From positions 49,290,001 to 49,354,000 of the forward strand of contig JBITNC010000001.1 in the NCBI GenBank assembly GCA_050084985.1: a stretch of DNA of 64,000 bases, in the 5' to 3' direction. Position numbers and translations under genes: made by a program. This document shows, in pieces, positions 1 through 30,100 of the stretch. Source of the DNA: Nageia nagi (lineage: Eukaryota; Plantae; Pinophyta). The number at the start of each line of letters is the position of its first letter. The stretch's first letter is position 1. Below the pieces are notes generated by a model. That model ran no database searches and had not been told where the DNA came from. It saw only the letters and a program-made list of their open reading frames with translations.

Positions 1-92
1 TGTTAGGAGTCACCATCCAGATGATTGTGAATATATTTATAACTGCTCACCTTATAGAACAACAATGAAAGAAAAATCCTAAAAATTCTCAC

Positions 93-179
93 ATTCTTTG
101 TCTCGTAGGAGTACCCTTTAAAATGGTAAACATGAATAATGCAGTCCTTAGGGCCTTTATTTCTCTCGTCTTCAGGAAT
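93..179 (-). CDS. UBP12: UBP12-like exon IPEDERNKGPKDCIIHVYHFKGYSYETKN
   Basis: CAG acceptor, GTGAGA donor, 87 nt; matches UBP12 IPEEEKNLGPHDRLIHVYHF. Confidence 0.9.
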
Positions 180-3100
180 CTGATAAATACATCCATCTCT
201 TAAAACTTTAATGAAAGCACAAATTGTGCCATGCAGTTTTCTCTATAAGTCATTAAAAGGAAACAATTTTCTTTGTCAAACATCCATAATGTCAGGAAGT
301 CTAAAAAATTTGAAAGCACACTTGAAAAACACACCTCTTCTGCTCTGTATGTGAAATGTTCGGATACAATGTACTTCAGTTTTTCATTAGGACAAAGTAC
401 CTATGAAAAACAAGTCATTTCTGTCATGCAAAAACAACGAAAGGTGGAATGCCAAAAATAACAGAGATATAAAAATAAAGGTAGCTGTAAAGCCAAAGAA
501 TACAGAGAGAAAATATTACCTTGCATATTCTGTGACCAGCAATCTGCAAAATTCTGAGCTCTGCCTGTTGATCAGACATCTCCACCTTTAAAGAAACAAA
601 ATAAATAAATTAAGAATAACACAGAACAAGGTTATTTTAGCTACAGACAGGAATAACAGAATGACACAGGACAGGAAAGAAAATAACTAGTATTGTTGTA
701 CATCATGAGGCCACACAACATAAGGTTACAAGAGCTTAAGCTGAATGGATGTGAGATAAGACAGTGTCAGCAGCCACAGACATGTCAAATTTTGTCGTAG
801 GAAATTGGTGTACCATCTTTGGGACTAAGAAAACAGTGCATGAAAAATCTCTGGAAGCAATGAAAAATAACTTTCTCAGCAGAAAGGTCATAAAAGTAGG
901 AGTTTGAATATATTGCTAGCTACTTGTAGAAGATACAGTAATAAGAATATTAGAGGCTATTGACAGATACTGGAAGTTTAAAAATACAGAAAATATTCGA
1001 TTTTTGTCTTCAAGTTTCTGTTCATGTTCACAATGGATGTAAAATCTAATTGCTAATGTCTCCATTTTGCGTTTTTATGATTATGCATATTTGTGTATGT
1101 GAAGCATGGAATTTGTGTATCTTAGGTGGTGTGGAAGTATTCTATGTGGAGTTAGACAAATAAAAGAATAAAAAATATAATAAAAGGGGATATAAGGGTA
1201 ATGTGTCAAAAGATATAATATTAGTTATCACATCTTTTATTTGTAAAATAAAGTTTTATGCATTTATGGATGCCTAGGGATTTGTCAATGCAAAATTAGA
1301 ACATGAGGCTATATAAGGAAGCTTGGCATCTCATTTTTGTTATGTTATGTTATATGTGTTGATTGTAATTGAGGATCCAAGTGATTCTTGTGGAGAAAAG
1401 GCTGATCCTTGCTCATTCTTTCTGAAGATTGGTGATGATCCCTCTCTTCAGGAAGCCCTAATTAGATAGACAAGTGATGGCCCTTGCTATTTGATTTGAT
1501 CTAAGGGTTGATCCCTTAGTTTTGAGGGGGAAATCTACCTAGGGTTTTCTACAAAGCTTCAATGGAATTAGCAGCTAGGGTCTCAGTGTTTGAGTGCAGT
1601 GTGGTTTGGTCATTTTCAGTGTTTGGCAGTGTGGGAGAGTCAATGGATAGCAGCATGGTATTTGTGGCATTATAGTTCAGCAGTGTTTTGGTGTATTCAG
1701 CTCATCTTCAGCTTTGTAATTGCAATTATATATCCAGTGAGTTATTTTATTATCAATTTCAAATGTGTTGATGTATTTGTCTCGCATGTTGTAGAAATAA
1801 TATAAAAATTGCACTATTTGGTGTTATTCGAAATCTTGGGCAATTTTATATTTATAGATCAGAATTTCATTATTTTGTTTGCAAAGAAAATTCTAAATTT
1901 TGGCTAGGGTTTGATAAATATTAGAAAAGGGATATTAAAAGTGGTATCAGAGCTTAGATTTTGTCATCTTGTGAAATCCATCAGATCTAATAGATCTACA
2001 ACTATTTTGAGCAGATCTAGTAGATCTACAAGAGTTTTGAGTAGATCCACCAGATCTAGCATTTTTGTAAGCAAATCCAATAGATCCGGCTATATTTTGA
2101 GTCAAAGTTTGTTACAGAAAATTCAGATTTTCAGTTTCTAGCTTCTGGGTATTAGAGATTTTTGGGTGATCCAGTACATCAAGGGGTATTGCACTTAGAA
2201 AGCAATTTTCGAGGTCACAAAGACATTTTTTTGAGAAAATATGCATTCCTAAACTAGGTCGTCTAAGCTTGGGAGATAAAATTTTCAGGTTTAAAGGCCA
2301 TTTTTGGGCACAAAAAGTCTTGATCTATCATCCTGGCAGTCAAAAAATTTGATATGAAGATTTCAAGTAAAATTGAGATTTCTAGTAAAATTGTCTGAGG
2401 AATTTCTGCAAATCCAATATTGTACAAGTTTTGAATACCCATTTGGTTGATTTGGACATTAAGAGTTTTGGGTATTATTGATCCATTGGTATTTTGCATA
2501 GATCTAACCATGTCTTGAGTGGATCTGGTATTTTTCATAGTTTTGAGCAAGGGTTTTGAAGATCATGGCACCATTGGAAGGAAAAGAGTTGGTTGAGAGG
2601 CTCTCTAATGCAAGAAATAAACTTAGACCTATATTTCAATCAAAAGATATTTTCTTTCGCACTTTTGGGGAGATAGAAGATTGTTTGCAAATGATAGATC
2701 AGCCACAAGTAGTTATAAATCCATTGGTGAAGGCCTTGGGCAAGTCTAGATGATTGAAACATACAAATATGCAAGTAAGAATCATGGTTACTTCTTGTTT
2801 GAGCAGAGTTTTAAGAATTTTTGCACCTAAAGCTCCTTATAATGATGTCACATTGAGAACAATATGTCAATTATTGGTTGATAGTTTTGAAGGTTTGAAG
2901 GATATTACATGTTCTCATTTCTCTAGGAGGGTTGTCATACTTGAAACATTTGCAAAAACTAAAATGAGTTGCATTTTGATAGACTTGGACACGGATGAGT
3001 TGGTTTATGAAATGTTTCATCATTACATTGCTTCGGCTAGAGAGGACGATGCTAATAATGTCATTGAAGCCATGAGAGATATTATGATTCTAATCATTAA

Positions 3101-6100
3101 TGAAAGTGACAAAATTCCTCAACCACTTGGAACTATGTTAGGGGCCGTTTGGAGGCAATATTTGGTTGATTCACCTGTTGCTCATGTTTTGGTTGACAGT
3201 GTTGTGAAAAGATGTGAGAAGGAGTTGAGACCTTTTTTGGACAGCAAAGAGGGTGGAAAAGAAGAGGAAATCAAATCAGAAATTTGTGATTCTACATCAC
3301 ATGTGGTATGTATGGCAAAATCCCAAAATGTTTCTTATGAAAATTATGACAATGATGGGATTTCTATGACTATTGAATCCTTCGATGGCACTAGTAAAAT
3401 TGATGCAAGTAATGACATGGTTGAGATCACTAATGCACTTTCAAAAGAAGAGTATGTTGGAGTACCCAAATCAAAAAAATGCCTAGCAATGAAAATTTTG
3501 AAGGAGAAGCACTTGAGTTTTGGGACAGCCATTGAGGCACTGCTCAAAGGTATGAAGTAAATTCTGATTTTTATGATAGCGGTTCATTAATTTGGCATAG
3601 CTATGTTATTCATGAGGAAAATGAGGAACAAGCAATGCCTAAATTGAAAGAGTTTGGTCTAGACTCCCAAACCGAACGGAGAAGAGTTTTCATGATGAGT
3701 TCAGTATTGGGGATTTGGAGAGTGAGGTATTCAGAAAAACAATCACTCATGAGAAGCACAAGGCACATATTTTTCTTGAACAAAACAACCAACACTTCAA
3801 ACCTTGGGATCCAGATGTGTTTCCACCAAAATATGATGAACTTGAAGCTGATTTTGAGGAATCTTCTGATTCAGCTATAGACTCATGTGAAGGTATTTTT
3901 CATACCGCATCTTTGCCTTCCTCAGGTTTTAAAAATCAAGTGGAAAGCCTTCTGCTTGGTGTCCATGTTAAAACTGTGATTGCATCTGAGCCATGCACGA
4001 AGAATTGTTCAGTTTTCAGCACTTTAACTGTTGGTTGAATTCTTTGTAATGGATTAGTACTTTTGAATTACGAAGCCCAACAAGAGGAATTCGATATAAA
4101 GGCGAGATTGGGTGGTTTTTGTGTAATATTTGCATTTGAAGATCTCAATCATAATCATCTAGTTGATCCAAACTGTAGCTCCACATTCAAGCATAGGACT
4201 ACCAAAGGATTAGATAACTCAAAGGTTAGTTTGATTCCCAACAATGTTTTGGTTTATCATCTTTTCTACAAAATTGTACTATTTGTCTTCCATGTTGCAG
4301 AAATGAGTTATTTTATTATCAATTTCAAATGTGTTAATGTATTTGTCTCCCATGTTGTAGAAATAATATAAAAATTGCAATATTTGGTGTTATTGGAAAT
4401 CTTGGGCAATTTTACATTTATATATCAGAATTTCATTATTTTGTTTGCAAAGAAAATTTTGCATTTTGGATAGGATTTGATAAATATTATAAAAGGGATA
4501 TTAAATGGATAAAAAAAGACAAATTTATGACTTACCAAAGCATGCGCTTAGCTTGAGGGTGAAGATGTGACCAAGATATGATCTTGAAGGCACCCAAATC
4601 AGGTCAAAAAGACAAAAGCAAGAAAGCGCATGACAACAAAAGTCATAATCAAGACTTTTGAAAGCATGTGCGTGGCTTAGAAGGGCTCCTAAACAAACAT
4701 GAGGGTGAAAATATGACTCTCTGGAGCATGTACTTAACTGGGATGGCATCCCAAGAGACTTCAAAGAGAAAAAATGGCTAAATCCTAACCCCAAAACATC
4801 AAGATCAATCCAAAAGAGGCATTAAGGAGGTGAGTGCATGCCAGAAAAAGACATAATCATGACTTTCTAAAGCATGTGCCTAAGATGAAGCGCCCTCCTA
4901 ATGGCTTGAACATGAAAATTTGACTAAGGCATGAGGAAAAGAGTATCAAAACTAGCCCGAGATCACATCAAGAGGGAAGCACATGACAAAGAAAGTCATA
5001 AATATGACTTTCTGGGGCATGCGTTAAAGGCAAGAGAGCTTCAAGAAGGTGTTAAAGTGCAAAAGTGACTAAGTGTCGGACTTGAAACTCCATGATTAAA
5101 CCCAAAACAGCCTAGATCATCAAGCACATGCCTCCAAAAGACCAAATCTTGTCTTCCAAAAGCCTATGCTCAAAAGGGAGAGATACTTGGGTCAGGCGCA
5201 TGATTTCAAAAGTCATAATTGTTACTTTTTGAGACATGAGCTCAAGAGAAGACATCATAATTAGACACATGACTTAAAGAGGAGAATTTCGGTCTACAGG
5301 TGCTAGCCACACACATCCCTAGGTTGGCTATCACATTTAATGCACATCTTTCTAGGCCAATCCTAGCCAACCAAGAGCAAATGAAACCCTAATTTTGCCT
5401 ATAAAAGAGGAGTCCACCTTCATTTTTACATTTTAAAGGGAAGAAGGTTGATATAGAGGAGGTGGTGACTACCAATGGTGCCTCATTAAAGAAGAAGTTC
5501 AGCATTGACCTAGCAACTATGATTAGATCATCACATGAACATCCTAGCCCAAGAGTGAAAGACAAGTCCACATAGATTCACTATGTAAGAAAATTCATCT
5601 TTAAGGTCAATAACATGTCAATCACCAAGGTCTTTTTGAACAAGGATCCTAAGAAATCTCAAGAATTGGAAGCCTATACCCAAAAGGTGGAGATAGGCAA
5701 GATCAAGGCCATAGGAGCAAAACGGATGAAAGAAATCAGAAGGATTGCAGAAGAGATAGAGGAGACCCAATGAAAGCATATCCTTGAAGAAGAGAGTCAT
5801 ACCATTCTCAAGATAGGGTGATCACTCAAGGACAAGAAAGAGCCATTTGTTTGGAAGCATCATATGATATGCATTTCAGCTAAAGTCACGAAGCAAATCA
5901 ACCAGAACAAGGTTGTCTCTGATGTGCTTGATATGGGGATGATGAAGATCTCAAGTCATGAGAACCAACTGGATGGGGGTGCTATAATTGAGATGCAACA
6001 ATTTTAATTTCATTTTATTTTAGGATAATTTTATTTCAATTTGGATTTCCAAACATTATTCATTTTGATTGAGCCTTGTAATGGATGAGGATTTGCTCCC

Positions 6101-9100
6101 ACAAGTGTTGGACTTAATCTTGTATTGCCATGTAGCATGTTTCATCACTAGTAATTAGGTTTTATTTCAAGTAATTTCATTTAAATTTACATTAGGGTTA
6201 GGGTAACACTTAGGGTTGCCACTTAAAATTATTTATAGCCCTTGAGGGCTCATTTTTGGGGGAGGATGATCATTTTACTCAAGAGAAGCTATTTTGAACA
6301 TGCTAATATTTTTAACTCTCTTGTATGTGAATGTGAGGCACAATTAACCAAATCAAGACTTTTTTCCACTTAATGGGATTGTGAGTTTGAGCACTTGTGC
6401 TTGTTGTTTACTTGTAGTTAGTACATGACTTGTGTACATTTCTCGCAAGTGTAGGCTTGTTAGAAAGATGGTTGAATATCTTATGAAGTTGTGTAATTGC
6501 TATTTGATGAGCATTACTCACTCTTTCGTATGAAGATGAATGAATGTTGGTGAAATCTCTGCTATGTCTTTTGGTTTGATCTTCTACTCACATTGTTGAT
6601 CCTTTTGCAACATCGCCATAGGATCCTACTTGTTTACAATTTGGACTTAGCTATTTGTAGCAAGGTGGGAAAAGTGAGTGTCGTCCTTCATAATAAATTA
6701 GATAGAAAAGTGGTTCAACCCCTAGTTCATTGGTGGGCTTGTCATTGAATGTACCCCCCGTGTGCCGTCATCCCCATTCTTACACTTTTCTTTGCTTTTT
6801 TTGTTATTTTTACTTTCTTTATTATCGAAAGTCTATACTTTCAATCGGTGTAGAACAACTCTAGTGCCCACAACAAACATGGTTAACCGTTGCTACCTCT
6901 ATCCTCCCACTAAGCATGTATAGCTATTGTCATAGTCGCACAAGACCTCTCATGATGCTAGAAACCTTGGGGTAATCAATCCTTTCAAGTGGAGGTTAGT
7001 AATGCAACCTCACTCACATGTTGGATGCCCTTTCCTAGTTATCACCTAGGTGGTCTTCGTAAGTGGAAAAAAAAACATCCCAACAAGGTCCAAAGACAGA
7101 AATGCATATTATCACATTTCCCAAGAATGAAGATCAAGATGAAGCTAGTGGGAGAATTTTATTTAATTGTTGTTTATTTTATTTCAAAAAAGATATTTTT
7201 ATTTATATTATTCTAACGAGGAAGAGTTTTTGCTCTTCACCTATCAAAATGTAATTTGACTCTAATCTTAGTCAATTTCACTAGGGCTAGGGTTAGTGCA
7301 ACACCTAAATTAGGGTTTGTGCCTAACAAGAAATTATAAGTACCCCAAGGGTCATTTGCAAAAGGAGGGGTAGAATAGTGAAAGCTTGGAGGAGCACGCT
7401 TGTGAAGAGAAATGCTAAGAAAGTATTTGTCATTTTTTTGGAATATGAATGGCATGTGTTTGATTTGTTCTTATGCATGGTGTAACTTAAATACTTGTGT
7501 TCATTTCTTTTGAAAACTTAGAGTTTTAGAGAAAGATAATTGAATATCTTTTGAAGTGTTTAAGTTTATGTTCTTTCATATTTTGCATTCAAAGTGTATG
7601 TATTTTGAACATGTGCTTTCCTTATGACATTTAGAAGTTTCTTTCATTTGAGCTTGGCTTTCACATTTTCCATCTCCATCTACCATTAAGCAATCTCCAT
7701 AGGATCATAACACTTTATGCTCTTGTCTTTCTATAAGTTGAATGAAGTTGTTTGTAGGTATACTTGATTGAATGGATGAAAAACCTTAAGAAACCCAAGG
7801 AAGATTAGTGATTCGGACAATGCTACACTTGTGATAATATTTTCTTGTCGTTTGGAAACCAACTCTTTATTCTGTTCTCCATTTTATTTTCTTTGTTTTC
7901 CTTTTTTTTGACAACCTCATTTCTCTTTTTCAATTTGCTGCACCTTAAATCCTGACAAGAAATCAAACTTCAAGAGTCTCAGCAAGGATAGGAAGATCTC
8001 TTTGACAAGCTAGAAACATACTTCAGATGCTTATTAAAATGTGGGTAACAACTACATCTCTACTTGACTAGATTCATTCCAAGATTTTATCATAAGAACA
8101 TAGACATTATAAGATAGAAACCTTGGGGTATCAGTCCTTTCAAGTGGGGGTAAGTAACACTACCTCACCCAAATGTTGGAAATCCATTTTGCCATCTTCG
8201 ATGGTATTTTGTAAGAGGAAGGAAAAAAAGCCCAACATATGGTAGTGTCCTTTGGTGCGAAAGCACCTCTCCAACAACTAGCAGTTCAAATTTTGTCCCA
8301 TCTTTGCAACTCCTTTAGATGTGAGTGCAATTGGAGTGTATTTGAGCATATACACTCCAAAAGTCATGATAGGTTGGTCTAGAAATGATTAAATGACTTG
8401 GTCTATGTGCATTACAATCTCATGCTTTACCACAAACAAATAAATGGATCTGATCAAGATGTAATCAATTTGGATGAGATTGATACCTCTTCTAAATGGA
8501 TCATGAAACTTGAAATTGAAACTTAAGCATCAGGTGATATTTATTTTGAGGAGGATATAGAATACATTGAGAGGAAGTCAGCATGTGAAGTTGAAGCCAT
8601 GTCACAATCATCGAGGACAGCACAAACATCCACAGTAGCTTTGAAACAAAAAGGGAAAAAGAGGGCAGATCACTAATGTGTTTGTAAAAAACATTTTGAT
8701 ATATATTTTAATGGTTTTGTAGAACCGCTATGTATATGGTATTATGTCATATTTAATGCAAAAAATATGTTTTCCTATACTTAAAATTTGAATTCTTTTG
8801 CTATTCTATTTTGTGGATGATTGCTGAATAATTTACCACATTTTTTAATAAATTATCTGCTATGTATTTCGATGATGCAAACTCTATGTATTTGTCATTT
8901 TAAATTCAAAATACATGCAAAACTTTTATCTATTTTTTTTTCAAGTTTGTTTTGTTGCATCACTGATTAATCTTTTCATTGATGTAAATGATTAATTGCC
9001 ATTCTGCATTTTAAAACAATGGTATTTTGAAAATGCAATAAATTTAGTGGCTAGAATAAAAAGGAAAATCATAATTGAGAAATGGCTATGTTGAAGACAG

Positions 9101-12100: not shown

Positions 12101-15100
12101 ATTGGTAGCGAACCAATGTCAGTTGATGATCTTGAATGCTCAAGTATCCCGATGATTTCATTAAGATCCCTAAACTAGTTATATCCGCAATTGAAAACTA
12201 AGGCAATACAAGCTATTTTATTTACATTGCTGAAAACAAAACTAAACTACTAGATCACAGATTTTTCGTTATTACCGAGATCAAAGACCTTGTTTTGGTC
12301 TACCCTAAGGTGGAACTAGGGAGTAGTTTGGCCATCATCTGACATGCCTTCGAACTGAGAAAATAACAATGAAAAGGATCTTTGACATGTCACAAAACAC
12401 ACACATGAGATATTAATCTTTGAAATATAATCTTCTCTGAACTGATATGAATCTCTGAAAGGAGCATATGAGAAGTTCTCTTTATTGGATATCTCATGCT
12501 GTAAGGGTTCATCCATTCTGGGTGCTTCATTGATTGCAACAACCAACCCATTGATAGAATCAACCAATTCATTCTAATTTTCATACATCTCAACCTCTTC
12601 TATACCGAACGATAGAAAATTTAAACACTGTGGCGTAAGAATTGTAGGAATATAACCTTGATATTCTTCGTCACTAGACTCAGGATCACTTACATCTTCT
12701 AGTTCTCTCAATGCAGAATCTTGATCTATCTTTATTGAATCTTTGTTATTTTGCAAGAATAAGAAGTCATCAATCAAGACTGCACATTCTTCAAATTCAT
12801 CTTCACATTTTGCACTAAAAGAATCATCTATTTCTAGCTCAAGATGTGTGAAATTGTTTTTCTCTTCAAACTCACCAAATTCTGAATATGAATCAAATTC
12901 ATCATAATCCTGAAAAAGCATGAAGTCATTAATTGTGGCCTCCCATTCTTCAACTTTATCTTTACGTTTTGAATTGAAAGCTTCATCTGATTTTGACTCA
13001 AGATGTGTGAAGTTGTCTTTTTCAACGTCGCCTAATTTTGAATGTGGACCAAACTTATGATCATCCTCATCATCAATCACTTACTTTTCCATTCCCATCT
13101 CGTCTTCCTGATCAAAGAAGAACTCAAAGGTAAGATCATTCTAAAGAACATCATCATGTTTGGATTTTGTTGAGCTTTGATCTTCCTTGAAAGAGTAATA
13201 ACTTCTATTATCTGATTCTTCTTCTTCTTTATCATCAAAACTCCGATGATAATTATATTCATTCATAATGTGTAACCATTCTTTGTCGAACCATATCGAA
13301 AATGCACTTGGGATATCCAATACCATAAGTTCTATGTTATGTACTAGGCATAATTTCGTAAGTTGCATTCTGACATCTCTCACTATCCCAACTATTCATG
13401 CTTTACCATCAGTAAAATCAAAATTTTCTTTGGGATATGGGGTTGGAACAAGTCCAGTCTCACAACACGCTCCATATGACATGATGTCATAATCTAAATT
13501 AGGCTACACCATGCTAGTGAGAGAGATTGTGTTTTTGCCATAGATTTCAATAGACAACGAGAATGGTTCGTATTCTTCTATCTCCTATTCTAGATCCGAT
13601 TCTTATGATGTGCCACATTTTGAATGTCCATCGATTTCTTCATTCTTCTCAAAAGAATGAGGGTTCTGATAATATGGGGCTGATTTGTTCTTTAATAACA
13701 TCATTTGTTCTAATTCCTTGAATTGGTGTAGACTCTGAAGGAGTGGAACAGAAATTGTGTTGAGGACTTTTATTCAATGATTCCTTTCTTTTCATTTCTT
13801 CCAACTAATTACTCATTTCTTATGCCATCCTTTTGAGATCTTCATATCCTTGATTCCCCACAAATCCATTATTCGGTCCCAAAGTACTTAGTATTTGTGT
13901 TTGCAACTGATGTAGTCGGTTTTAAGAATGTGGGTTGAAAATCTGGCATATTCTGAGAATCAGGGGGTATCTTCAGCATTGATAACATTTGACTTCTCAT
14001 TTGATTTTGTTCATTGTCTTGATTGTACCAGGATGATTGACTTGATGATGATTGAGAGTTATATATACATTGAGCCTACTAGTGTTGCTTACTTGGGTTT
14101 AACCAAGCATCTAGATTCAAACAAGTCGTCATGTGTCCATAACTTGCTTGAGGTCGTATATATCCAAGTGTGCTATATGGCAATCCCTGACTGCTTCCTA
14201 GAATACTTCCTTGTGACCATGGTAGTGCGGACATGATTGTTCAGTTAATGATTTGATCCTTCAACACTGAACACAAGAAGTATTTGCAAAATTACCAAAA
14301 TAATGCATCTCGAGAACTTAGAATACTTAGATAAATATTCTCTTGAATCTGTAGTGTAATTTTTGACAATCTTGATCTGAAACTACTCAGAATCTTATTT
14401 ATAGCTTTAATCGACCCTCCTTAGCTTCAGTTGCTCTCTATTTGGTGTACGCTATATATTCTTTAAATTATAGCTTTGGAGTAAGAGAGCAAAATAAAAA
14501 CAAAAACAAAAGAAAAACTAACAATTAAGTATTGCATGGTAACCAACTCAAGGTGTTAGAAAAAACGAATGGAAACTAACAATCAGGGAAGATAAAACGA
14601 TCAAACGGCCCCTCCTTCTAGCACCAATTTATGTTGGGAAGGAAATCTTTCCTCTTACTCAACGATTTTCGTGAGACAATCAAGACGAGAAAGCAAACCA
14701 ACATTTAGATAAGAACGTGTTACTGAACTCCTCTTGTAAGGACTGATATCCCAAGGTTTCTATCAGAAGGTCGTGTCATTAATACGAGCTTGAATTATGT
14801 AGGACTTGTTTGGGAATCAGCTGAGTGGTTTAGTAGAGATAGTAACTGTTAACTCGCATTTTTTATAGGGATTGAGGTGTGTTATCTTGCAATAGTTTGA
14901 AAGTTGCTATAGTTTAAAAGAAAGTGTAAAATAAAGAAAAGAAAGTGAGAATGAGGCGAAATATTGGCTAGACTTCAAAGAGGCAATCACAATGCAACAT
15001 TGTCTAAATTTTCTTTCTCTCGGATCGGTTAAGAAATCTTGTTCAATTCAATCAAGTCTTTGAAATAAATGATTGTTGTCCAATCATTCCAAAGATGAGA

Positions 15101-18100
15101 GAAAAGCGGAGCTTATTGTCGGTACTCTACAAGCAGGACCAATGCAATCAAATGGACTATGTGTGAATGAGGGTGGGTGGTTTTGAACAAGAGGTCTAAG
15201 AAGATGTCTTAAGAGAAAGGTTGATTCAGAATACAAACATTTAACAAGCAAGTAATGGATTAGCAACAATTCAAGACAATTCAAACATTTTGAAAAATTT
15301 CCAACAAACATTGCTAAACTCGAAAGTTTTCAAAGAGAAGCCACAAAAATATTCAAATTACAAAAATTGCTCTTAAAGGATCAATCCACCACTCCAATAC
15401 ATGAAAACACACTTTGAATCAATATGTAGCCTCTTGTATTATATTTGCAAAAGAGTTATGCATGAGTACATCAAAGTTGCTCCTCGATTACAAAAAGATT
15501 TCAATTTTCATGAAAATTTGCCTTTTCTTGGACTAAAACATTCTAAGTAAAAATGAGACCCCCTGTGGTGTATTTATATACTTTTGGAGCTTATTTTTGG
15601 TGTTTCCCTAACCCTAATCTAGGCTAATTGAAATGCAAATTGAAACAAAATTACATTTGAAGTGGTAGGAGAATATGTTCTTCCTTTTAACTACTTTTAG
15701 TGTATATACATGAAAATTGATACTTTTACAAAGTATCTTACAGATCTGGAGTCAACTTTGGATCTTCTTCACCATCTTTGAGTGCCCTTTTCACTGAAAA
15801 GTGAATTCCACCATTGATTTGAGCGATATTGGCAAGCTTTAGAGGATTTTAGTGAAGATTTTCTGAAAAATGGATTTTTTTGGTCAAAAATCTGAAAAGA
15901 TAGGGGGAGGAATCCAAAATTTATAAAAATTTTAAAAAGTGCTCAGAAGGATCTTATATGGCAATTAGCTTGGAAAAGTGTGCCCACCCTTTTGGGGTAT
16001 TAAACTTGCTCAAAATGCAAAAAAAGTTTAGTGTGTCTTGGAATGAGGTTTTCCATGCATCTATGCCTTCAAAATCGATTTTTGGGCCCATACGATTTTC
16101 TCTCTTGAATCTAGGTACCAAAATACACTTGTTTGGATTTTCATAGGCTTCGAAATGTGCACCTAGCCTTTGGAGGTGGTAAAGTTGACCAAAAGTGAAT
16201 ATTTGAAGTATTAATGTGGCTTAAAATGGTCCTTTCCATAAATCTACGACTTCAAAGTTGGTTTTTGACAAAAATCCATTTTCCCTCCTCATGTTAGGTG
16301 CTAGAAATCACCCCATTGGATTTCCATAGGCTTGGAAATGTACGCCTAGGGTTTTGGGACACTAGAATTGCTCAAAATTGAAAATTTGAAGACCTAAAGT
16401 GCCTTAGAATGAGGATTTTGATGCAAACAAATCATCACCTTTGAATTTTGAGACAAATACCATTTCTTCCTTGGTGGATAGGCACCAAAATTCACTCCAT
16501 TGGATTTCCCAAAGGGGTGCAAAACCCCTCCTACATGCCATTTATGCAATCTTTGTTGAAATCCAAAATTTCCAAACCTCAACATGCTTGGAATGACATC
16601 CTCTACTGGCCTATGCTTGCTGATTTCAATTCTGGCAATCTTTGAAAAATGACCCTATCTCCCTTAGTCTCATTCTAGACCCAAAATTCTATGCTCTGAT
16701 GAAATGTCTCAGATCCTAGCTCCTTGGCTGCAAAACTGGTGACTGGATACTTTGAAATTCTTCAGGGTCTTCATCGCATGATCTCAGTGAAGTTCCCCTT
16801 GATATCATATTTGCACTCTTAAGAATGAACTATTGGTCACCAAAAGCCAATCTCAAGGCAATGCACCTCATTGCCTTTGCAAAAATAGGGTCTCCAAAAT
16901 CTTGTATTTTGGAGTGTGTTGTGCGGGCACAACACAGGGATGATGTGATTCAAAATGTTGCAAGCATCAAAATTTGACTAAATATTAGTGTGAAGGAGTT
17001 GGTCACATGTCTTTTCGTTTCATTGGTCAATGGGTAAGATTGTGATCTGGAATACAAAGTAAATGAAGTGCATTTATTCTTTTTATTTATTTTTTGTATT
17101 AAGATCAGTTGTATGTATGGGAATGTTGTTTATTAGGGATGATATAGAAAAGTATGCCCTTATAAACCATTAAAGCATAAGTTTTTTGCTCAGGATTTCC
17201 TAGACGACTAGAAGGGTACCAGATATATCATTCTAAATCCCATGATGATGTGATAATGAGGTCAAAAATGGAGTTGCTGTCCTCAATTGTTCCTATATCT
17301 AATTTAGATTGTTTGTAGCAGAATTGATATCAAAGTTTCCTCTAGAGATTTGAGCATGTATTAATAATTCTAGGTTGTCCTGAACGCCTTTGCATATATA
17401 CAATACACAACATAAAATTTCAATTTACTTATATCATACTTCACAGTTTTTCAATATTATAAGTTGTCACATATGAATGACCCATAAATTAGTTTGCTTA
17501 TTGAAAAAAGTAAATTCCATGTTGCAAATGATATGATTTATTTTATGAAGCTCTTTATTCGAAGTCATAAATGACTAGAAAAATAGGTTTCTTGTTATCT
17601 ATGACAATCCTATGCACTTGGTTTTTCTCCAAGGAGAACAATCACTCCTTTGGAAGTATCAGAGGCACCGTCTTCTCAGCTTCAATTTCCAAAACCATTG
17701 AGCTTTTCTATTTAAATAATAAGTTCTTAAAGTTCTACCTATTTTTCAAAAGTGTTCATTTATCTAAACTCTAAACGGAACAAAATTAAGATACTGGTTA
17801 AGTGGATACCACTCTCTATCCCAATTTCCCAAATTTTCATTAAATACAGACTACGTAAGATTTAATCAACTCTCTATCATTTCCAGTCTAAAAGTTACTC
17901 GAAATTTTATTAAGAGATGTGCATCAAAACACTTGATTTAGGACTTATAATAATTTACAATAGTTAAAACATTTCATCCATAAGCTAACAAAATCTACTA
18001 CCATAATAATGTTAAAGAATTCTTACTTGTCGAGTTCCATGATGCTGAAAATAGGTCTTGACAGAAGGATAGCGAAGATTATTCATGCTATCCACTGATG

Positions 18101-21100
18101 TTTGTAGGCATATAATATCGCCATTCTTAAGCTACAAAATAAATGGCCTTGCACACATAAGATTTGTAGAAAGATCTTGCTAGATAGACTATAAAATAAA
18201 TATTCTGTCCACCAACATCTTATCAAAGCACAGGTTTTTCAATGTTATCCTTATGTAAAATAAATATACAAAACAACCCAGAATCTTCACACAAAAGTTT
18301 CTTAATGTTGTTACTTGTTACTATGCAAGTTAAAAATAAAAGATAATCCAGAATCTTCACCTTGTTTTCTTCATAAGTTGCCAATTTGTTGATGAATTCA
18401 CACTTCACATCAGGGCGGTAACTAATCTCCTGAAAAATAAAATGCATATGATTTGCCATGTTAAAATCAAAACATCCAAGCTTAAGAGGGAAAAAAAAAA
18501 GGAAAAATAATTAGGATGATTGCAATTAGTAGACGAAGAACAGGGCATGGAAGAGGAAAAACTAAACTAAATAGATAAGCTGTTATTCGACAGATTACTA
18601 TGATTGCAATTAACAATAACTACAAAACAATGATTATCATCTATTGCAACACAAAATTAAATGATATTATAAATGGAATCATTGAACTTTTTGGACCTAG
18701 ATGCCAAAACACTGAACATTGGGTGTTTTGGGCCTAGATGCCAAAACACTGAACACTCGGTGTTTTGGGCCTTGATGCCAAATTTATTGAAATATCTAGC
18801 TAGACCCATACTTTGCTCTTTTTTCCACTTGGATGATTCTAATGATATTGCCATGATGATGAAAGATAATCCTGTGTTATTGCTTTCTTCTTGTGATAAA
18901 TCTTCATGATGATTGCTCATGATCTTTCCATTCATTTCTCCATATCTAAAATGAGCACTTGGGAGTGATTTATAAAGGATTAATGAATTCGATTTTGAGT
19001 TCACCTAGATGGACCCACTTGGAACAATGTGCATAGAAGATAATGCTAATTTAGAACAATTCGCTTAATTTTTATAATATTTCCAAACTTGTGCGATAAT
19101 GATTGCTTATGATCTTTTGAATGCCTTGCTTGTCATTTCTTTTTTCTCGTCATCATATTCGGAATGAGCACTTGGAAGTGTTTTATAAAGGATTCATAAA
19201 TTTGATTTTGATTTTACCTAGCTAGACCCACTTCGAATAATGTGAATAAAGATAATGCTAAATTAGAAGATGTCACTTTAAGATATTTGAAAATTACCCC
19301 TAGTGGCCAAAAATTAACGCTTTATGTAAATTAAATAAAACACTTCAATTTTTTCATAGCTAAAATGTAATTTAAGTTTCTGAACTAGCACAATCAGCCT
19401 GTGTCCCGCTGTGGGCGGATTATTTTTGAAATGTTGAAAGTGAATTTCGGGGAGTTGTTCCAAACACATATTTCATATGTCAAAAGATGAACTATCTGAA
19501 AATGTTTGTCCTATGAATTTATCTAAGATATTACATTCTCTGATGCAATGGAATCATCTTGAATTTTGGTCACCCTTTACATGTTTCCCCATCTTCCTTA
19601 ATATGGAATTAGAGCTGCTTCTATATTTTCTATTCTCTTAATGAAATTTAACAAGCAATGAAATCATTTAAAGGATTAGCAAAATCCAAATAAAATGTCA
19701 GGTTCAATTCTTTTGATTTTGAAATCAATTATCACATATGAAAATATCTGAAAACATTTCAAATCTCTAACCATTTTGAAGAGCATGAGCAGATTCATTC
19801 CAATACCGAACTGTTATATATTTCCTTTGCAAATAACATCCAAAGAAATAAGAAATTGTATAGGATGATGATAAATCAAAAACTGAAAGTTGATTAATCA
19901 CCCCAACCATTAGATTCATAAGCAGTGACCTAAGAAGTTATGTAACACAATAGAGACTTTAAGTAAGCAAAGAATTAAAAAAGAAATATAACCATTAGAT
20001 TCACTTGCCTCATAAAGCTCCACTTCTTCATCTGTTCTAAAGCCTGACATTTCTTTAAACTTCTTTATGTCGTCCACTGGCCTTCTTGCTAGCTTAACAA
20101 ATTGACTTCCAGTGTATCTGACAATAGAAACGAGTATATTTTAACAATAAAAATCTTTGATAATATTTGCTCAATAAATTAATAACCACACATATCAAGG
20201 ACATTTAGAACTCTTACCGAATCTCCTCTTTATCTGGATCATAAATCTTAAAAAATAAAAATATATCTTCCTTTGGCTTTGGAGACTGAAGATCTAGAAT
20301 CTGCTGATCCTGAAAAGTCACAGCTACAATCTGATACCTATGCTTCAAATATATGCTACAATCAAATTGATGAAACCTAAAATTTTACTCTGGTTGTCAA
20401 AGCAGTAAGGAAGTGTCATAAGAATATAAAGTCTCATTCATAATGCTTTCTATCGTTTTGTTTGAATCAGCGAGTTCACCTCACTTTTTTACAACGACAT
20501 GAACTGCTCTGAAGCAAACAAGTGGAACTAGAAGAACTCAACAAAATGCCTGTCCAAGGAACAAAAATCCTACTTCATGTTAAGGCAGAATTATAGGAAT
20601 CATATTTCCATTCATTAGACAATTAGAATTATATATAATACCAAATTTAGAACTTCAATGAATCTCAAATTCAACATCCAAATTTAGAAAAAATTCAATG
20701 TTTTTCAGCAGGCAGTGATTTTGTTGTTTTGTCTGCAATTCTGCCATAGAAAACCACACTCTTGTTGAATAAACTCCAGATTTGAAAATATGAAAATTCT
20801 TATTGGAAGAAGCTCTCCAACAGATTTTGAACAAAGTCAACAGAGCTACAGTTGAAAAGCTATGACCTCAAAAACTTGACCTTTATGAAACTCAAGTTTT
20901 GCCATTTATGATCAATTCTTAACATAGGGGTGACTGTTGTGCCTGCACAACACACCCCAAGATGCAGCATTTTGGGGACCCTACTTTTTTTGAAGGCAAT
21001 GGATGACATTGCCTAGAGGTGATTATACAACGGCTAGAGAAAAGAGTCAGAGCGGTCAAGTGATCAAGTAGTGCACACAAATACCCACAAAGGCACCAAG

Positions 21101-27100: not shown

Positions 27101-30100
27101 ATTAATGAGACCAAAGAGGCTATTCAAGAGTTATTCCTAGGAATAACTAATTTCTTTATTGAAGACAATGGGTCCTTCATCACTCAAGACAAGATCCGCG
27201 AACTGATTGCCAGGTGGGGCAATAGTTATCAAGTGATGCATGAGCTAAGAAGGAAAGTTGTTGGCATGCCAATGATACTGGAGTACTGTCATTAGTTCTT
27301 TTACCAGTATGATTGGCTATTCTAAGCTGTTTCGAAGTGTCAGGATTTCATCCAAGTCTGGACAAATTTCAAAGTAGACATGAAACAGCTAGCGGAATAC
27401 CAATTTGATCTAAGGCTGATCAAGGAAGATGGACGCAGTAGGGACTACTCCACAGTAATAAATGAGGTCCAGCTAATGATCAACACTTGCCTTGAAACTA
27501 AAGATATTAATGTCCTCAAATCTAGCAAACAGCTCAAATATGGTAGCAATATGGCAGTATGGTGCAGCAAAATGAAGAAGACTTCAAAGACCATCACCGC
27601 ATATCTGTTGGCAAATGAAGGGATAATGGAGATCCTCAACATCGGAGTCAAGAATAGAGAAATCTTCATGGGCACGGACTTCGAGGCCACCATTGCATCA
27701 CATGTGCAAACCGCAAATCAACCACCATAATTTTCGTCACTTTCAAAAATTTTGAAAATTTTGTAAATCAATCAACCAGGAAAGTTGAGCACCAAAACTT
27801 GACTAACCTTGCTCTCATGATCAGTCAGTCTGGCAAGTAGAGCACCAAAAGTCACCTAACTTAGTCATAGCAAACAACTATGTAATATTTTAATATTTTT
27901 TTATAGAATTAGAGCAACACTTGGAAACCCTAGAAATTGTATAAAAAGACCCCATTGTGAAAAGGTTCAATTTTTTTGTAAAAGGAGAAAAATTGTGAAA
28001 ACTTTTATGTAAGTCTTTTACAAACAAAATACAAAGTGGTTAATGCAAAGACTTGAGTTTGACACTTTTCATATTGATGTGATGGATTGATTCTTTGAGG
28101 GCACTCAGTGGGTTTATGTACTTTCACTTTATTCCTTTGAAAGCTCTTGGGTTTTAGGAAAGTTATCTCTAAAAAACATTAAAAAGTGCTTGAAGCCTAC
28201 CTATGTTTGTTGCTTGGTCCTAGCATGCAAGTTGATTGGGTATTCTATGTCAATTTCTACTTCTATGACATCTTGTTAGGTCCTTCATCCAAAACCATGA
28301 TCCATTCACTTTGATCTTTAAGACCTTCCATTTCCATTCAATTGAATCAGTCCTATTCGACATCTCCAACATTTTCGAGCATTTCCAGCCATGTTGAGCT
28401 CAACTTTGCATTTTTGACCATTTCTGAGCTTTCCAAGCTCAAATGGTTCAAAAATGCACATCTTTATTGTACTATCCACTTCCAGGCTCAAAATTGACCA
28501 AAATGCACCTTTTCATGATAATGACCATTTTTGAGCTTTTTGGGCTAATACTTGACAAAAACGCTTATTGTTGTCACCTTAGCTACATCCACTACTATCA
28601 GACTTAGACTTGGCAAAAATGCTCATTTTCGTCACACTTGGTATTTGTGAGCTCAAATTCTGCAAAAACGATCCCATCTCCACCGGCTACACTCTAAACC
28701 CAAAAACCCGTGCTCTGATGCTCTCTCTCAAATCTTGGCTCCTTGGCTCCAAAATTGGTGACTGTATACTTTGATACTCTTCAGGGTCTTCATCGTAAGA
28801 TCTCCTTGAATCAGTCCTTGATATCATGTTTGCACTCTTCAGAATGAACTATCCATCGCCAAAAGCCAATCTTAAGGCAATGCACCTCATTGCCTTTGCA
28901 AAAATAGGGTCCCCAAAATCTTGTATTTTGAGATGTGTTATGTTGGCATAAGAGATCTAAATCTGAATCATCTGACTTCTTAGAAAACACCTCTATGTAG
29001 TGCACCTATCCCTTGCCTTGGCAACGGTGCTCTAGCTCCCAAGTCTTCTTGCAATAAAAGCACTTGCCTTCCTCCCTCAACTTTCTCCAAGTGGCTGCAT
29101 CCAACTGGTTCGTCCAAGGTGGGGGGAAGGGTTTGGCCTTGCTAGGCCCCTCCTTGTCAACAAAAGTCTCCCGTGTGGCTGGCCCCTTGTACGTCTTCCC
29201 TCCCTTGAGGTATTTCATGGTCATCTCTAGATCATATGCAGCCTGAATGTCATCCTTAAGGTTCCTAGGTGAGCATACCTTGACCATCCCCTGCAATGGC
29301 TCCATCAATCCCTCTATGAAGAAGAATGTCAACCGCTCCTCAGGAAGGTGGTGAATCATGACTGCAATCTTTTGGAATTCTGATACATACTTTTCCAACG
29401 CCCCCTGTTGCCTTAGAGATGTCAAATCTTGGAAGTAGTCATTCTCCTTCTTCCAATCGAACCTCTTTACCAACTATATAGCAAACTCATCAAAAGAGGT
29501 AATGAGTGATTAATTCTAATTGATTACTCCATGTTACCACCATTCTAGGGAATCACCCTCAAAGTGTTATGATGCAAAGCGAATTGCATCTTCCTCCACC
29601 ATATTCGAGCTCAAGGTGAAGTAGGTGTATAGCTGATGTAGTCAAGCCCTAGCCATCATCCTCTTCCCGTCATAAATCTATACCTTCATTTTGTTTATCT
29701 TTAGCTGCAGGTCTCTCTTATCTTCCCACAAGCTTCTTGGAGTGTGTGGACCGTGTGAACTATTCCCCTTCAACCTTAGGATCTCAAGGTAGTTGTTGAA
29801 GTTGACATCTCTCTTCAATATCGAATCCAACATGGAATACTCCCTGAAAATCTGATTCAACTCTAGTGGGCCAAGAACCCTATTCTTCGCCTCTTCTCCT
29901 GACTTCTTGGCGAACATGGGTTTGGATGGCTTGTGGATAATGGGTTGTTACCCAATCTTGCCAACATCCTCATCTAGGTATCTCCCTAGGAGAGGGTTAA
30001 TACCCTATGGTGCTCGGTGTGAGTGGGATCTCAAGAATGTGGGTTCTGGATGACCCATAGATCTGTGGTGGGTAGACTCTCGATCTCTCAAACTGGGGAT

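What the first reader, a model, noticed from the sequence alone, without database searches (positions are those of the whole stretch)
1038..4505. LTR retroelement carrying an intronless PDS5 (cohesin regulator) domain where gag should be
Seen: LTR, Met-PBS, ~600-bp leader, then an ATG-initiated ORF whose first ~230 aa cover the conserved N-terminal domain of plant PDS5C/D/E-type proteins. It has no introns and one stop, is followed by an acidic tail and a 3' LTR end, and is flanked by a candidate TGGA TSD. Known: host PDS5 genes are intron-rich, and the PDS5 N-terminal APEAP loop docks WAPL/sororin/haspin motifs. Here the loop reads APKAP (charge reversal). Inference: this is retro-transduced cargo, possibly a whole LTR family propagating a PDS5 module as a chromatin tether or cohesin-pathway decoy. 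The strong divergence from host PDS5 with a nearly intact frame suggests it evolved as coding sequence after capture.
Basis: partly seen in the sequence, partly recalled or inferred. Interest (0 to 1): 0.9.

Follow-up and report, generated by a model that had tools for sequence, protein, structure and literature searches.

The report
Dead conifer retrotransposon carrying PDS5 domain
This is a decayed copy of a multi-copy, gag/pol-less LTR retrotransposon of a conifer-like genome. Its only recognisable gene is an intronless copy of the N-terminal domain of a host PDS5C-class cohesin/DNA-methylation factor: a real and fairly unusual case of gene capture, but with no sign that this copy still works.

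Summary

**Element structure**
- 5' LTR at 1038-1939, followed by a perfect tRNA-iMet primer site at 1942-1953 and a 611-bp leader.
- An ATG-started, intronless PDS5 N-terminal domain follows (Pfam PF20168, E 5e-35). The predicted fold matches PDS5B (TM 0.85).
- The last 202 bp of a 3' LTR lie at 4304-4505, 94% identical to the 5' LTR.
- TGGA(T) flanks both ends.

**Family**
- Contigs from four related organisms cover the LTR, leader and PDS5 region with dozens of 80-95% identical variants per position. The 5' flank is low-copy.
- Six other first-stage notes describe the same architecture elsewhere in this genome, so the scan has found this before on other DNA.
- The cargo groups with short ORFs of Taxus and Cryptomeria, next to the gymnosperm Tudor-bearing PDS5C class.

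**State of this copy**
- It is dead: one in-frame stop, a frameshift, no gag/pol, no polypurine tract, and a 3' LTR cut down to 202 bp.

**Selection and function**
- One pairwise comparison with a metagenome relative gives dN/dS 0.40. A neutral simulation gives 0.74, and 0.40 was reached in under 1% of runs. This hints at past coding constraint, but that relative was not shown to be TE-borne.
- The tether or decoy function is untested.
- Gene capture by LTR elements is already documented as massive in gymnosperms, so this is a new member of a known kind.

The parts
1034..1038 (+). Left target-site duplication TGGA(T). It is 4 bp if the LTR starts at TG 1038, and 5 bp if the boundary is shifted by one.
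   Evidence: Sequence read. The same TGGAT follows the 3' repeat end at 4506-4510. The position coincides with the copy-number jump seen.
1038..1939 (+). 5' LTR, 902 bp. It starts TGTAAAATC and ends GATATTAAA, an imperfect terminal inverted repeat (7 of 9). A TATA-like CTATATAAGG lies near 1310.
   Evidence: Depth is 3-6 in the bins 500-1000 and 700-3000 from the bin 1001-1167 onward. Contigs bridge 1738 (X4 records 27 and 28). The last 202 bp are repeated at 4304-4505.
1942..1953 (+). Primer-binding site TGGTATCAGAGC (initiator tRNA-Met).
   Evidence: In one search, 54-83 contigs per run (X1-X3) match up to 1973-1975 and then diverge. The LTR and PBS are therefore shared with elements that have other interiors.
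1954..2564 (+). Leader of 611 bp, with a 30-bp tandem array (3.5 copies) at 1982-2086.
   Evidence: It is multi-copy (depth 200-1100). Joints 1955>2118, 1963>2430 and 1973>2118 in other copies link PBS-proximal sequence to the same leader.
2565..2750 (+). First 62 codons of the PDS5-derived ORF, starting at the host-equivalent ATG.
   Evidence: BLASTP to Ginkgo Gb_09525 residues 5-50, E 4e-6. Relatives P0003 and P0005 share the same start.
2751..2753 (+). In-frame stop codon TGA that interrupts the PDS5 domain.
   Evidence: Relative P0003 is open at this codon.
2754..3240 (+). Remainder of the PDS5 N-terminal HEAT/ARM domain, with the loop reading APKAP.
   Evidence: Pfam PF20168 E 4.7e-35. 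PDS5B 5hdt E 6e-12. AF2 model pLDDT 88.9. Foldseek top hit 5hdt with TMq 0.85 and rmsd 2.1.
3241..3560 (+). Acidic, non-PDS5 tail of the ORF. The frame is lost near 3470-3480 relative to copy P0004, and the stop is at 3558-3560.
   Evidence: P0004 shares this tail at 78% identity. There is no match to the Ginkgo protein beyond about residue 185.
3643..4035 (+). Open stretch in another frame. Its end (about 3850-4035) carries a C-x-G-x-FHTAS motif like cinnamoyl-CoA reductase and the NAD-dependent epimerase family. It is a possible second captured gene fragment (a lead, not shown).
   Evidence: The ESM Atlas feature hits are dominated by 3beta-HSD/epimerase. The two best PDB phmmer hits are both cinnamoyl-CoA reductase, at E 0.24 and 0.98. 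There is no Pfam hit and no word-based homologue.
4304..4505 (+). Remnant of the 3' LTR: its last 202 bp only. The first ~700 bp, the polypurine tract and probably part of the interior are deleted.
   Evidence: 94% identical to 1738-1939, K2P 0.062. It ends exactly where the TSD begins.
4506..4510 (+). Right target-site duplication TGGA(T).

Best explanation
Positions 1038-4505 are one old, now dead insertion of a non-autonomous LTR retrotransposon.

**How it works.** The family has the cis signals for retrotransposition: a promoter-bearing LTR and a tRNA-iMet primer site. It has no gag or pol, so it must be copied in trans by autonomous relatives that share the same LTR and PBS (inferred).

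**Origin of the cargo.** At the place of gag the interior carries the 5' part of a spliced mRNA of a gymnosperm PDS5C-class gene. It runs from the native start codon through the whole ~225-aa N-terminal HEAT/ARM domain. The C-terminal Tudor reader is absent. Unrelated coding-like sequence follows. The capture most likely happened by template switching between co-packaged RNAs during reverse transcription (inferred, by analogy with maize Bs1 and retroviral oncogene capture). The chimera was then amplified to many copies in a group of related conifers (shown).

**State of this copy.** It has since lost its reading frame (one stop, at least one frameshift), most of its 3' LTR and its polypurine tract. 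It can neither move nor make the protein (shown). The cargo may have been under moderate coding constraint earlier in the family's history (one test). In this copy it is a passenger relic.
For: - **LTR, PBS, leader, TSD and 3' LTR remnant:**
- **Repeat boundary and LTR length:** the repeat boundary lies at about 1038 and contigs run continuously across 1738 in other genomes.
- **Multi-copy interior:** 39-47 distinct contigs cover position 3025 in each of three organisms and 15 in a fourth. Most are 80-95% identical to this copy. The 5' flank is at depth 3-6.
- **Linkage of PBS to leader:** joints in other copies link PBS-proximal sequence to this leader.
- **Shared LTR and PBS:** 54-83 contigs per run share the LTR and PBS and then diverge at 1973-1975.
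- **PDS5 identity:**
- **No gag/pol:** no such Pfam domain in any ORF of the element.
- **Related short ORFs:** P0001-P0005 at 57-78% identity, all truncated or frame-broken.
- **Origin:** in the tree, window+P0001+P0002+P0005 form one clade (SH-aLRT 99). It sits inside a clade made only of short ORFs that includes Taxus and Cryptomeria (94). That clade lies next to the Ginkgo and Welwitschia ~900-aa Tudor-type proteins and apart from the long PDS5A/B type.
- **Intron-bearing host gene:** Arabidopsis PDS5C/RDM15 is multi-exon, with a T-DNA in the '7th exon' (PMC8184781).
- **Same architecture elsewhere:** six first-stage notes in this genome, unverified.
- **Background:** TE-mediated gene-fragment capture is reported as especially intense in conifers (PMC13477047).
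Against:
- The LTR ends in AA, not CA, and no PPT is present.
- The only relative with DNA in hand (L002) has no PBS in the 1032 bp upstream of its ATG and no LTR pair in 9.2 kb.
I did not establish their direction. The insertion may therefore not be shared with that organism.
- The intron content of the true donor gene in this genome was not checked.
Confidence: 0.8

Rival explanations
1. The family's PDS5C-derived protein is, or was, a functional TE-encoded factor kept by selection. One candidate is a Tudor-less decoy of the host RDM15/PDS5C protein-interaction domain that blunts RNA-directed DNA methylation. Another is a chromatin or cohesin tether. This copy would be a dead member of a family whose master copies express it.
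For: - dN/dS is 0.40 between this copy and L002 over 180 codons (bootstrap 0.25-0.62). A neutral simulation with the observed mutation spectrum gives 0.74 +/- 0.16, and only 0.4-0.8% of runs reach 0.40.
- The ORF starts at the native ATG and spans the whole folded domain.
- The model folds confidently as PDS5.
- PDS5C/RDM15 acts in RdDM through an N-terminal ARM protein-interaction domain plus a Tudor H3K4me1 reader (PMC8184781; bioRxiv 10.1101/2025.05.08.652912).
Against: - Every copy examined is truncated or broken: this window, P0001, P0003, P0005/L002 and P0004.
- The constraint test rests on one pair, and the partner is not shown to be TE-borne. The selection could date from a host-gene phase.
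- Family variability is only weakly lower at host-invariant positions (0.33 against 0.45; rho -0.14, p 0.07).
- No RNA run holds the stretch.
- The confident model is driven largely by host homologues in the alignment.
Confidence: 0.12
2. The short PDS5-like ORFs are a Cupressales-specific family of host genes (Tudor-less PDS5C paralogues). This locus would be a pseudogene of one of them that lies by accident between fragments of an unrelated LTR element.
For: - Taxus chinensis and Cryptomeria japonica annotations list several short PDS5-domain 'hypothetical proteins' in the same clade.
- L002 shows the ORF without a detectable PBS or LTR.
- The K in the loop is shared by the whole clade, including a 430-aa ORF.
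Against: - The leader and PDS5 region are covered by dozens of diverged contigs per organism. That fits a dispersed repeat, not a small gene family.
- The element is bounded by a matching TGGA(T) exactly at the repeat boundaries.
- Joints link PBS-proximal sequence to the leader in other copies.
- Other windows of this genome show the same LTR-to-PDS5 order (unverified).
- The annotated proteins are 'partial' and hypothetical, as TE-borne ORFs often are.
Confidence: 0.05
3. A one-off processed pseudogene of PDS5 (LINE-mediated retrocopy), nested in or beside an old LTR element and not propagated with it.
For: The sequence is intronless and frame-broken. An A-run (AAAAAAA) follows the right TSD at 4511-4517.
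Against: - The cargo has no poly(A) at its own end and covers only the 5' part of the mRNA.
- The PDS5 region itself is multi-copy in four organisms.
- Diverged sister copies exist.
Confidence: 0.03

Closest known systems
Maize Bs1 and similar gene-transducing LTR retrotransposons (own knowledge: Bureau, White and Wessler 1994; Jin and Bennetzen 1994; Elrouby and Bureau 2010)
   Same: A non-autonomous LTR element whose interior holds intronless pieces of host genes fused into an ORF. It was captured through an RNA intermediate. A mosaic of more than one donor is possible here: PDS5C plus a putative reductase-like piece.
   Different: Bs1 keeps part of gag and exists in a few copies. Here no gag is recognisable, the cargo starts at the donor's own ATG, and the chimera is present as dozens to hundreds of diverged copies in several species.
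Genome-wide TE capture of gene fragments in gymnosperms (Platycladus orientalis genome paper, PMC13477047)
   Same: The same phenomenon and the same plant group. Ty1/Copia and Ty3/Gypsy LTR-RTs holding exon fragments are reported as more intense and more ancient in conifers than in angiosperms.
   Different: That survey does not mention PDS5 or cohesin: zero occurrences of either word in the text. It also does not describe a family defined by one cargo.
LARD/TRIM-type non-autonomous LTR retrotransposons
   Same: LTRs, PBS and a non-coding or non-TE interior, mobilised in trans.
   Different: LARDs and TRIMs are defined by the lack of coding capacity. This family carries a host-derived ORF in the gag position.
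Plant PDS5C class / RDM15 (Arabidopsis AT4G31880; Ginkgo Gb_09525)
   Same: An N-terminal ~230-aa PDS5 HEAT/ARM domain, collinear from the start codon. Ginkgo Gb_09525 and Taxus short ORFs are the nearest named relatives, at 41-46% identity.
   Different: There is no Tudor domain and no basic disordered linker. It is intronless and strongly diverged. The acidic residue of the AP(D/E)AP loop is replaced by K. It is repeated and frame-broken.
TE-encoded anti-silencing proteins such as VANC of Arabidopsis VANDAL21 (own knowledge: Fu et al. 2013)
   Same: Only as an idea: a TE-borne protein that could interfere with host DNA-methylation machinery.
   Different: No functional evidence here. VANC is not derived from a host silencing factor and belongs to a DNA transposon.

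Membership tests
LTR retrotransposon | Two direct long terminal repeats | tested here: met
   5' LTR at 1038-1939. The 3' LTR is present only as its last 202 bp (4304-4505), at 94% identity. The full 902-bp unit is supported by contigs that bridge 1738 in another organism.
LTR retrotransposon | Primer-binding site complementary to a tRNA 3' end just inside the 5' LTR | tested here: met
   TGGTATCAGAGC at 1942-1953, 2 nt after the LTR end. The identity with the tRNA-iMet complement is from own knowledge.
LTR retrotransposon | Target-site duplication of 4-6 bp | tested here: met
   TGGA(T) at 1034-1038 and 4506-4510, at a boundary fixed independently by the depth jump. I estimate a chance match within the roughly 30-nt uncertainty at about 3% (my arithmetic).
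LTR retrotransposon | TG...CA termini | tested here: not met
   The LTR starts with TG but ends in AA in both LTR copies. The termini still form an imperfect inverted repeat, TGTAAAATC against the reverse complement TTTAATATC.
LTR retrotransposon | Polypurine tract before the 3' LTR | tested here: not met
   The 3' LTR is 5'-truncated, so the expected site is deleted. Only GCAGAAA precedes 4304.
Autonomous Copia/Gypsy element | gag and pol (protease, RT, RNase H, integrase) domains | tested here: not met
   No such Pfam hit in any ORF of 1038-4505. By contrast the Copia element at 38.3-42.2 kb of the same window scores RVT_2, rve and gag.
Repeated (transposed) family | Many dispersed, diverged copies of the same unit | tested here: met
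   2857-4080 contigs were laid per run for X1-X3 (224 for X4). Most were 80-95% identical and covered all bins from 1001 to 4507. There were 39-47 contigs at one PDS5 position in three organisms. Exact copy number could not be measured.
PDS5 (Pfam PF20168) | Significant profile match above the curated threshold | tested here: met
   121.2 bits against 27, E 4.7e-35, profile positions 40-203 of 1053.
PDS5 (Pfam PF20168) | N-terminal HEAT-repeat fold | tested here: met
   AF2 pLDDT 88.9 and pTM 0.86. Foldseek ranks 5hdt, 5frp and 5f0o first, with TMq 0.77-0.85. Caveat: the alignment is dominated by host proteins.
PDS5 (Pfam PF20168) | Acidic residue in the AP(D/E)AP loop | tested here: not met
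   K in the window. In the other 98 aligned sequences the counts are D 46, E 34 and K 9. All nine K belong to the short gymnosperm ORFs and P0074.
PDS5 (canonical cohesin regulator PDS5A/B) | Full ~1000-aa HEAT solenoid with the hook that binds kleisin | tested here: not met
   Only the first ~225 aa are present. In the tree the sequence groups away from the 1200-1900-aa proteins.
Plant PDS5C class (RDM15-like) | Short PDS5 domain plus C-terminal Tudor domain | tested here: not met
   The domain is nearest to this class. No Tudor domain is found in any frame of the element. It is a fragment derived from the class, not a member gene.
Processed pseudogene (LINE-mediated) | 3' poly(A) at the end of the cDNA and a TSD around the cDNA alone | tested here: not met
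   The PDS5 homology ends near 3240 without an A-tract. The TSD brackets the whole LTR unit.
Pack-MULE / other TIR capture | Terminal inverted repeats around the cargo | tested here: not met
   No inverted repeat pair of 30 nt or more in 1-9000.

The most novel reading that the evidence does not exclude
An LTR retrotransposon family of cupressophyte conifers captured the protein-interaction domain of PDS5C/RDM15, a host factor needed for RNA-directed DNA methylation of transposons. It kept that domain under purifying selection as its only ORF, without the H3K4me1-reading Tudor domain and with a charge-reversed partner-binding loop. The product would act as a TE-encoded decoy that titrates partners of the host silencing or cohesin machinery, or as a tether that steers integration.
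Probability: 0.12. Interest if true: 0.85.

Novelty: new member of a known kind. Interest (0 to 1): 0.5.

Why it matters
Gene capture by LTR retrotransposons is known, and recent work shows it is rampant in conifer giga-genomes. What stands out here is the cargo and its success. A complete, foldable interaction domain of a PDS5C-class protein has been copied many times across several species as the sole ORF of a gag-less element. In Arabidopsis that protein class helps establish DNA methylation on transposons and associates with cohesin.

If the coding constraint hinted at by one dN/dS test holds up, this would be a natural candidate for a transposon-encoded antagonist of host silencing. If it does not hold up, the family is still a clean, datable marker of retro-capture. 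It would also be a likely source of spurious 'PDS5-like' gene models in Taxus, Cryptomeria and related genome annotations.

Tried and rejected
The contigs that encode P0001-P0004 could not be read, so LTR-PBS-PDS5 linkage could not be checked in them.
- **Viral-contig scans** for the protein family and for the LTR-end/PBS pattern found nothing.
- **The metagenome scan** returned one sequence twice (L001 = L002). It has the ORF but no PBS or LTR pair.
- **A 202-bp-LTR (TRIM-like) model** was considered and rejected. It has no TSD (TCCAG against TGGAT), and contigs of another organism run continuously across 1738.
- **The first AF2 run**, with a 12-row alignment, gave pLDDT 49 and was discarded.
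- **The tail 3643-4035** found no homologue by word-based search and no Pfam domain. The BEN hit on 4063-4368 (E 0.03-0.04, below cut-off) is treated as chance.
- **ATG2**, named in another note for a longer copy, was not seen here.
- **Literature searches** for PDS5 with LTR retrotransposon, capture or conifer found no description of this family.
- **No RNA run** holds the stretch, so expression is unknown.
- **Copy number from summed contig depth** (a PDS5-to-flank ratio of about 170-300) is not reported as a number, because the tool warns that depth is not copy number.
- **No read-through.** The ORF was not read through its stop. The pieces were searched apart, and the stop codon was skipped (X) in the dN/dS script.
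- **No consensus** of the family was built.

Full report
**1. What is in the sequence**

- **Repeat.** Reading 700-5200 and the repeat searches confirm a 202-nt direct repeat at 1738-1939 and 4304-4505. It has 12 differences (94% identity, K2P 0.062).
- **Primer site and leader.** Two bases after the first copy lies TGGTATCAGAGC (1942-1953). This is the standard complement of the plant initiator tRNA-Met 3' end (own knowledge). A 611-bp leader follows, with a 30-bp tandem array at 1982-2086.
- **ORF.** An ATG at 2565 opens a frame that is stopped by TGA at 2751-2753. The same frame then runs on to 3557.
- **No other copy in the window.** No other part of the 64-kb window resembles the element.

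**2. The ORF is a PDS5 N-terminal domain**

- The piece 2754-3557 matches Pfam PDS5 (PF20168) at E 4.7e-35 over its first 162 residues. It matches human PDS5B and yeast Pds5 structures at E 6e-12 to 3e-9.
- The 62-aa piece before the stop aligns to residues 5-50 of a Ginkgo PDS5C-type protein at E 4e-6. The second piece continues at residues 73-268 with 41% identity.
- The cargo therefore begins at the donor's own start codon. It covers the whole folded N-terminal domain in one uninterrupted stretch of about 675 nt.
- With a 99-row alignment the domain is modelled at pLDDT 88.9. Its best structural matches are PDS5B 5hdt (TMq 0.85, rmsd 2.1 A) and yeast Pds5. The alignment is mostly host proteins, so this shows compatibility with the fold, not function.
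- The ORF pieces were always searched apart. The stop was not read through.

**3. The 5' boundary and the LTR length**

Contigs of four public DNA runs from four coded organisms were laid at 80% identity or more on 500-5500.
- Depth is 3-6 in the bins 500-1000 and 700-3000 from the bin 1001-1167 onward.
- Contigs of organism D run continuously across 1738 (1656-1812 and 1693-1851).
- The repeated unit is therefore about 902 bp (1038-1939). The 3' LTR is a 5'-truncated remnant.
- TGGA(T) lies directly before 1038 and directly after 4505.
- A 202-bp-LTR model has no such duplication.
- The termini are TG...AA rather than TG...CA. They form an imperfect inverted repeat.
- The polypurine tract is missing, as expected if a deletion removed the end of the interior together with the first ~700 bp of the 3' LTR.

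**4. It is a family, not a one-off**

Evidence: - Every bin from 1001 to 4507 is covered by many diverged contigs. Of the 4080 contigs laid for X1, 237 are 99% identical or more, 553 are 95-99%, 1569 are 90-95% and 1721 are under 90%.
- At position 3025, inside the PDS5 domain, 47, 43, 39 and 15 contigs of organisms A-D overlap.
- Joints 1955>2118, 1963>2430 and 1973>2118 are copies in which PBS-proximal sequence is joined to this same leader after internal deletions.
- Other joints show deletions inside the ORF (2596>2809 and others).
- At 1973-1975, 54-83 contigs per run (X1-X3) leave the alignment for other sequence. The LTR and PBS are therefore also used by elements with different interiors. 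These are the likely autonomous partners (inference).

Evidence from protein searches:
- They found short Logan-assembly ORFs at 57-78% identity (P0001-P0005).
- P0003 and P0005 share the same MAPL-GKEL start. P0004 shares the acidic tail.
- All are truncated or frame-shifted.

Evidence from the scan itself:
- Six other first-stage notes in this genome describe LTR elements with a PDS5 domain in the gag position. One is an 'intact' 7.2-kb element with a PDS5-ATG2 chimera.
- I could not read those windows, so they are leads, not evidence. They do agree.
- The scan has therefore found this before on other DNA.

**5. Origin of the cargo**

- The exhaustive HMMER search lists 945 relatives. The nearest host-type proteins are 40-45% identical: Ginkgo Gb_09525 (924 aa, C-terminal Tudor), Welwitschia, Psilotum and Marchantia.
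- In a 90-row tree of the domain, the window groups with P0001, P0002 and P0005 (SH-aLRT 99).
- That group sits inside a 15-row clade (94) made only of short ORFs of 109-337 aa. Where a source is named, these come from Taxus chinensis and Cryptomeria japonica.
- The clade lies beside the gymnosperm ~900-aa PDS5C-type proteins and apart from the long PDS5A/B type.
- The genome is therefore most likely a cupressophyte conifer. A longest contig of 129.5 kb in one run fits an inverted-repeat-less conifer plastome (my inference).
- PDS5C-class genes arose in seed plants (bioRxiv 10.1101/2025.05.08.652912).
- Arabidopsis PDS5C = RDM15 is a multi-exon gene. It has an N-terminal ARM protein-interaction domain and a Tudor H3K4me1 reader. 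It binds the Pol V subunit NRPE3B and is needed for RdDM at a subset of loci (PMC8184781).
- The donor's introns in this genome were not examined.

**6. The APKAP loop**

- The loop residue is D (46) or E (34) in the other 98 aligned sequences.
- K occurs only in the short gymnosperm ORFs and in P0074, a 430-aa ORF on a 1770-nt metagenome contig.
- The change is therefore an old, clade-wide state. It is not a private mutation of this copy and not demonstrably post-capture.

**7. Was the cargo selected?**

- The only relative with DNA is L002 (identical to L001), a 9.2-kb metagenome contig. It has 79% nucleotide identity over the domain, a related leader segment and its own frameshift. It has no PBS within 1032 bp upstream and no LTR pair.
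- Nei-Gojobori over 180 codons gives dS 0.65, dN 0.26 and dN/dS 0.40 (bootstrap 0.25-0.62).
- Neutral simulations used the mutation spectrum seen. They give 0.74 +/- 0.16 with the same estimator, and only 0.4-0.8% of runs reach 0.40.
- A second test was weak. Family variability is 0.33 at host-invariant columns against 0.45 at variable ones (rho -0.14, p 0.07).
- I read this as moderate past constraint on part of the path between the two copies. It is not yet assignable to a TE-borne phase.

**8. State and age of this copy**

- It has an in-frame stop at 2751-2753.
- The frame is lost near 3470-3480, relative to P0004.
- The later coding-like sequence is spread over three frames.
- No gag/pol is present.
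- The 3' LTR is reduced to 202 bp.
- LTR divergence of 0.062 corresponds to about 14 My at 2.2e-9 per site per year, or about 44 My at 0.7e-9. Both rates are from memory and only indicative.
- No RNA run holds the stretch.

**9. The rest of the interior**

- The acidic tail (3241-3560) is shared with P0004 but not with host PDS5C.
- The open stretch 3643-4035 ends in ...AIDSCEGIFHTAS....
- The Atlas feature search returns mainly 3beta-HSD/NAD-epimerase clusters.
- The two best PDB sequence hits are both cinnamoyl-CoA reductases, aligned on that motif at E 0.24 and 0.98.
- Pfam gives nothing.
- This is a lead for a second captured fragment. It would fit the 'mosaic' interiors noted elsewhere in this genome.

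**10. Comparison with the known**

- Mechanistically this is retro-capture of host mRNA by an LTR element, as in maize Bs1 (own knowledge). It is also the phenomenon catalogued genome-wide in gymnosperms in 2026 (PMC13477047).
- That paper's text does not contain the words PDS5 or cohesin.
- My literature searches found no description of a PDS5-bearing element.
- I therefore class it as a new member of a known kind.

**11. Limits and rules**

- Read laying and the look-up of sequencing runs allow one call each, and all runs were short contigs. Copy number, starts, ends and expression are therefore not measured.
- In line with the rule for proviral stretches in plants, I built no consensus and no repaired frame. 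I name no copy as a candidate for revival.

Noticed in passing
window:3643-4035 (+), motif near 3850-3900: The coding-like tail of the element carries a C-x-G-x-FHTAS motif. The ESM Atlas points to 3beta-HSD/NAD-epimerase clusters. The two best PDB hits are cinnamoyl-CoA reductases (E 0.24 and 0.98). It may be a second captured host gene fragment. There is no Pfam support.
   Followed up: partly
window:4502-5342: The 3' flank of the element is itself a repeat. Units holding palindrome-like GCGCATGAC...GTCAT...GCATGTGC motifs recur irregularly every 72-208 bp, two of the spacings being 145 bp. The bin 5176-5342 reaches summed depths of 14,000-19,000 in three organisms. Its nature is not determined.
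   Followed up: no
window:36971-45286 (-): A young Ty1/Copia element. Its 300-nt LTR segments are 99% identical. Its ORFs of 718 and 622 aa carry gag, protease-like, integrase and RVT_2 domains. It has no similarity to the PDS5 element's LTR.
   Followed up: partly
window:46258-46727: A perfect tandem duplication of a 235-nt unit, 100% identical.
   Followed up: no
window:10696-11491, 16047-16880, 28600-28899: Three related repeat blocks at 71-91% identity. They may be LTRs of another nested element. A gag-like remnant lies at 29009-29473.
   Followed up: no
window:729-1054 versus X2 contig record 10: A 766-nt contig of organism B follows the low-copy 5' flank up to about 1054. That species may therefore lack this insertion or carry a much more diverged one. 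The joint table was cut, so an empty site could not be confirmed.
   Followed up: no
L002:6184-6926: The metagenome contig with the related PDS5 ORF also holds ORFs with a hAT/DUF659-like motif (...ILSDGWKDRSGRDLLNFLV...) about 4.5 kb downstream. The recognition is from memory and was not tested.
   Followed up: no
proteins P0006, P0008, P0013, P0051, P0054, P0143 (Taxus chinensis); P0069, P0129 (Cryptomeria japonica): Several annotated 'hypothetical' short PDS5-domain proteins of these conifers fall in the same clade as the TE cargo. They may be TE-borne ORFs annotated as genes.
   Followed up: partly
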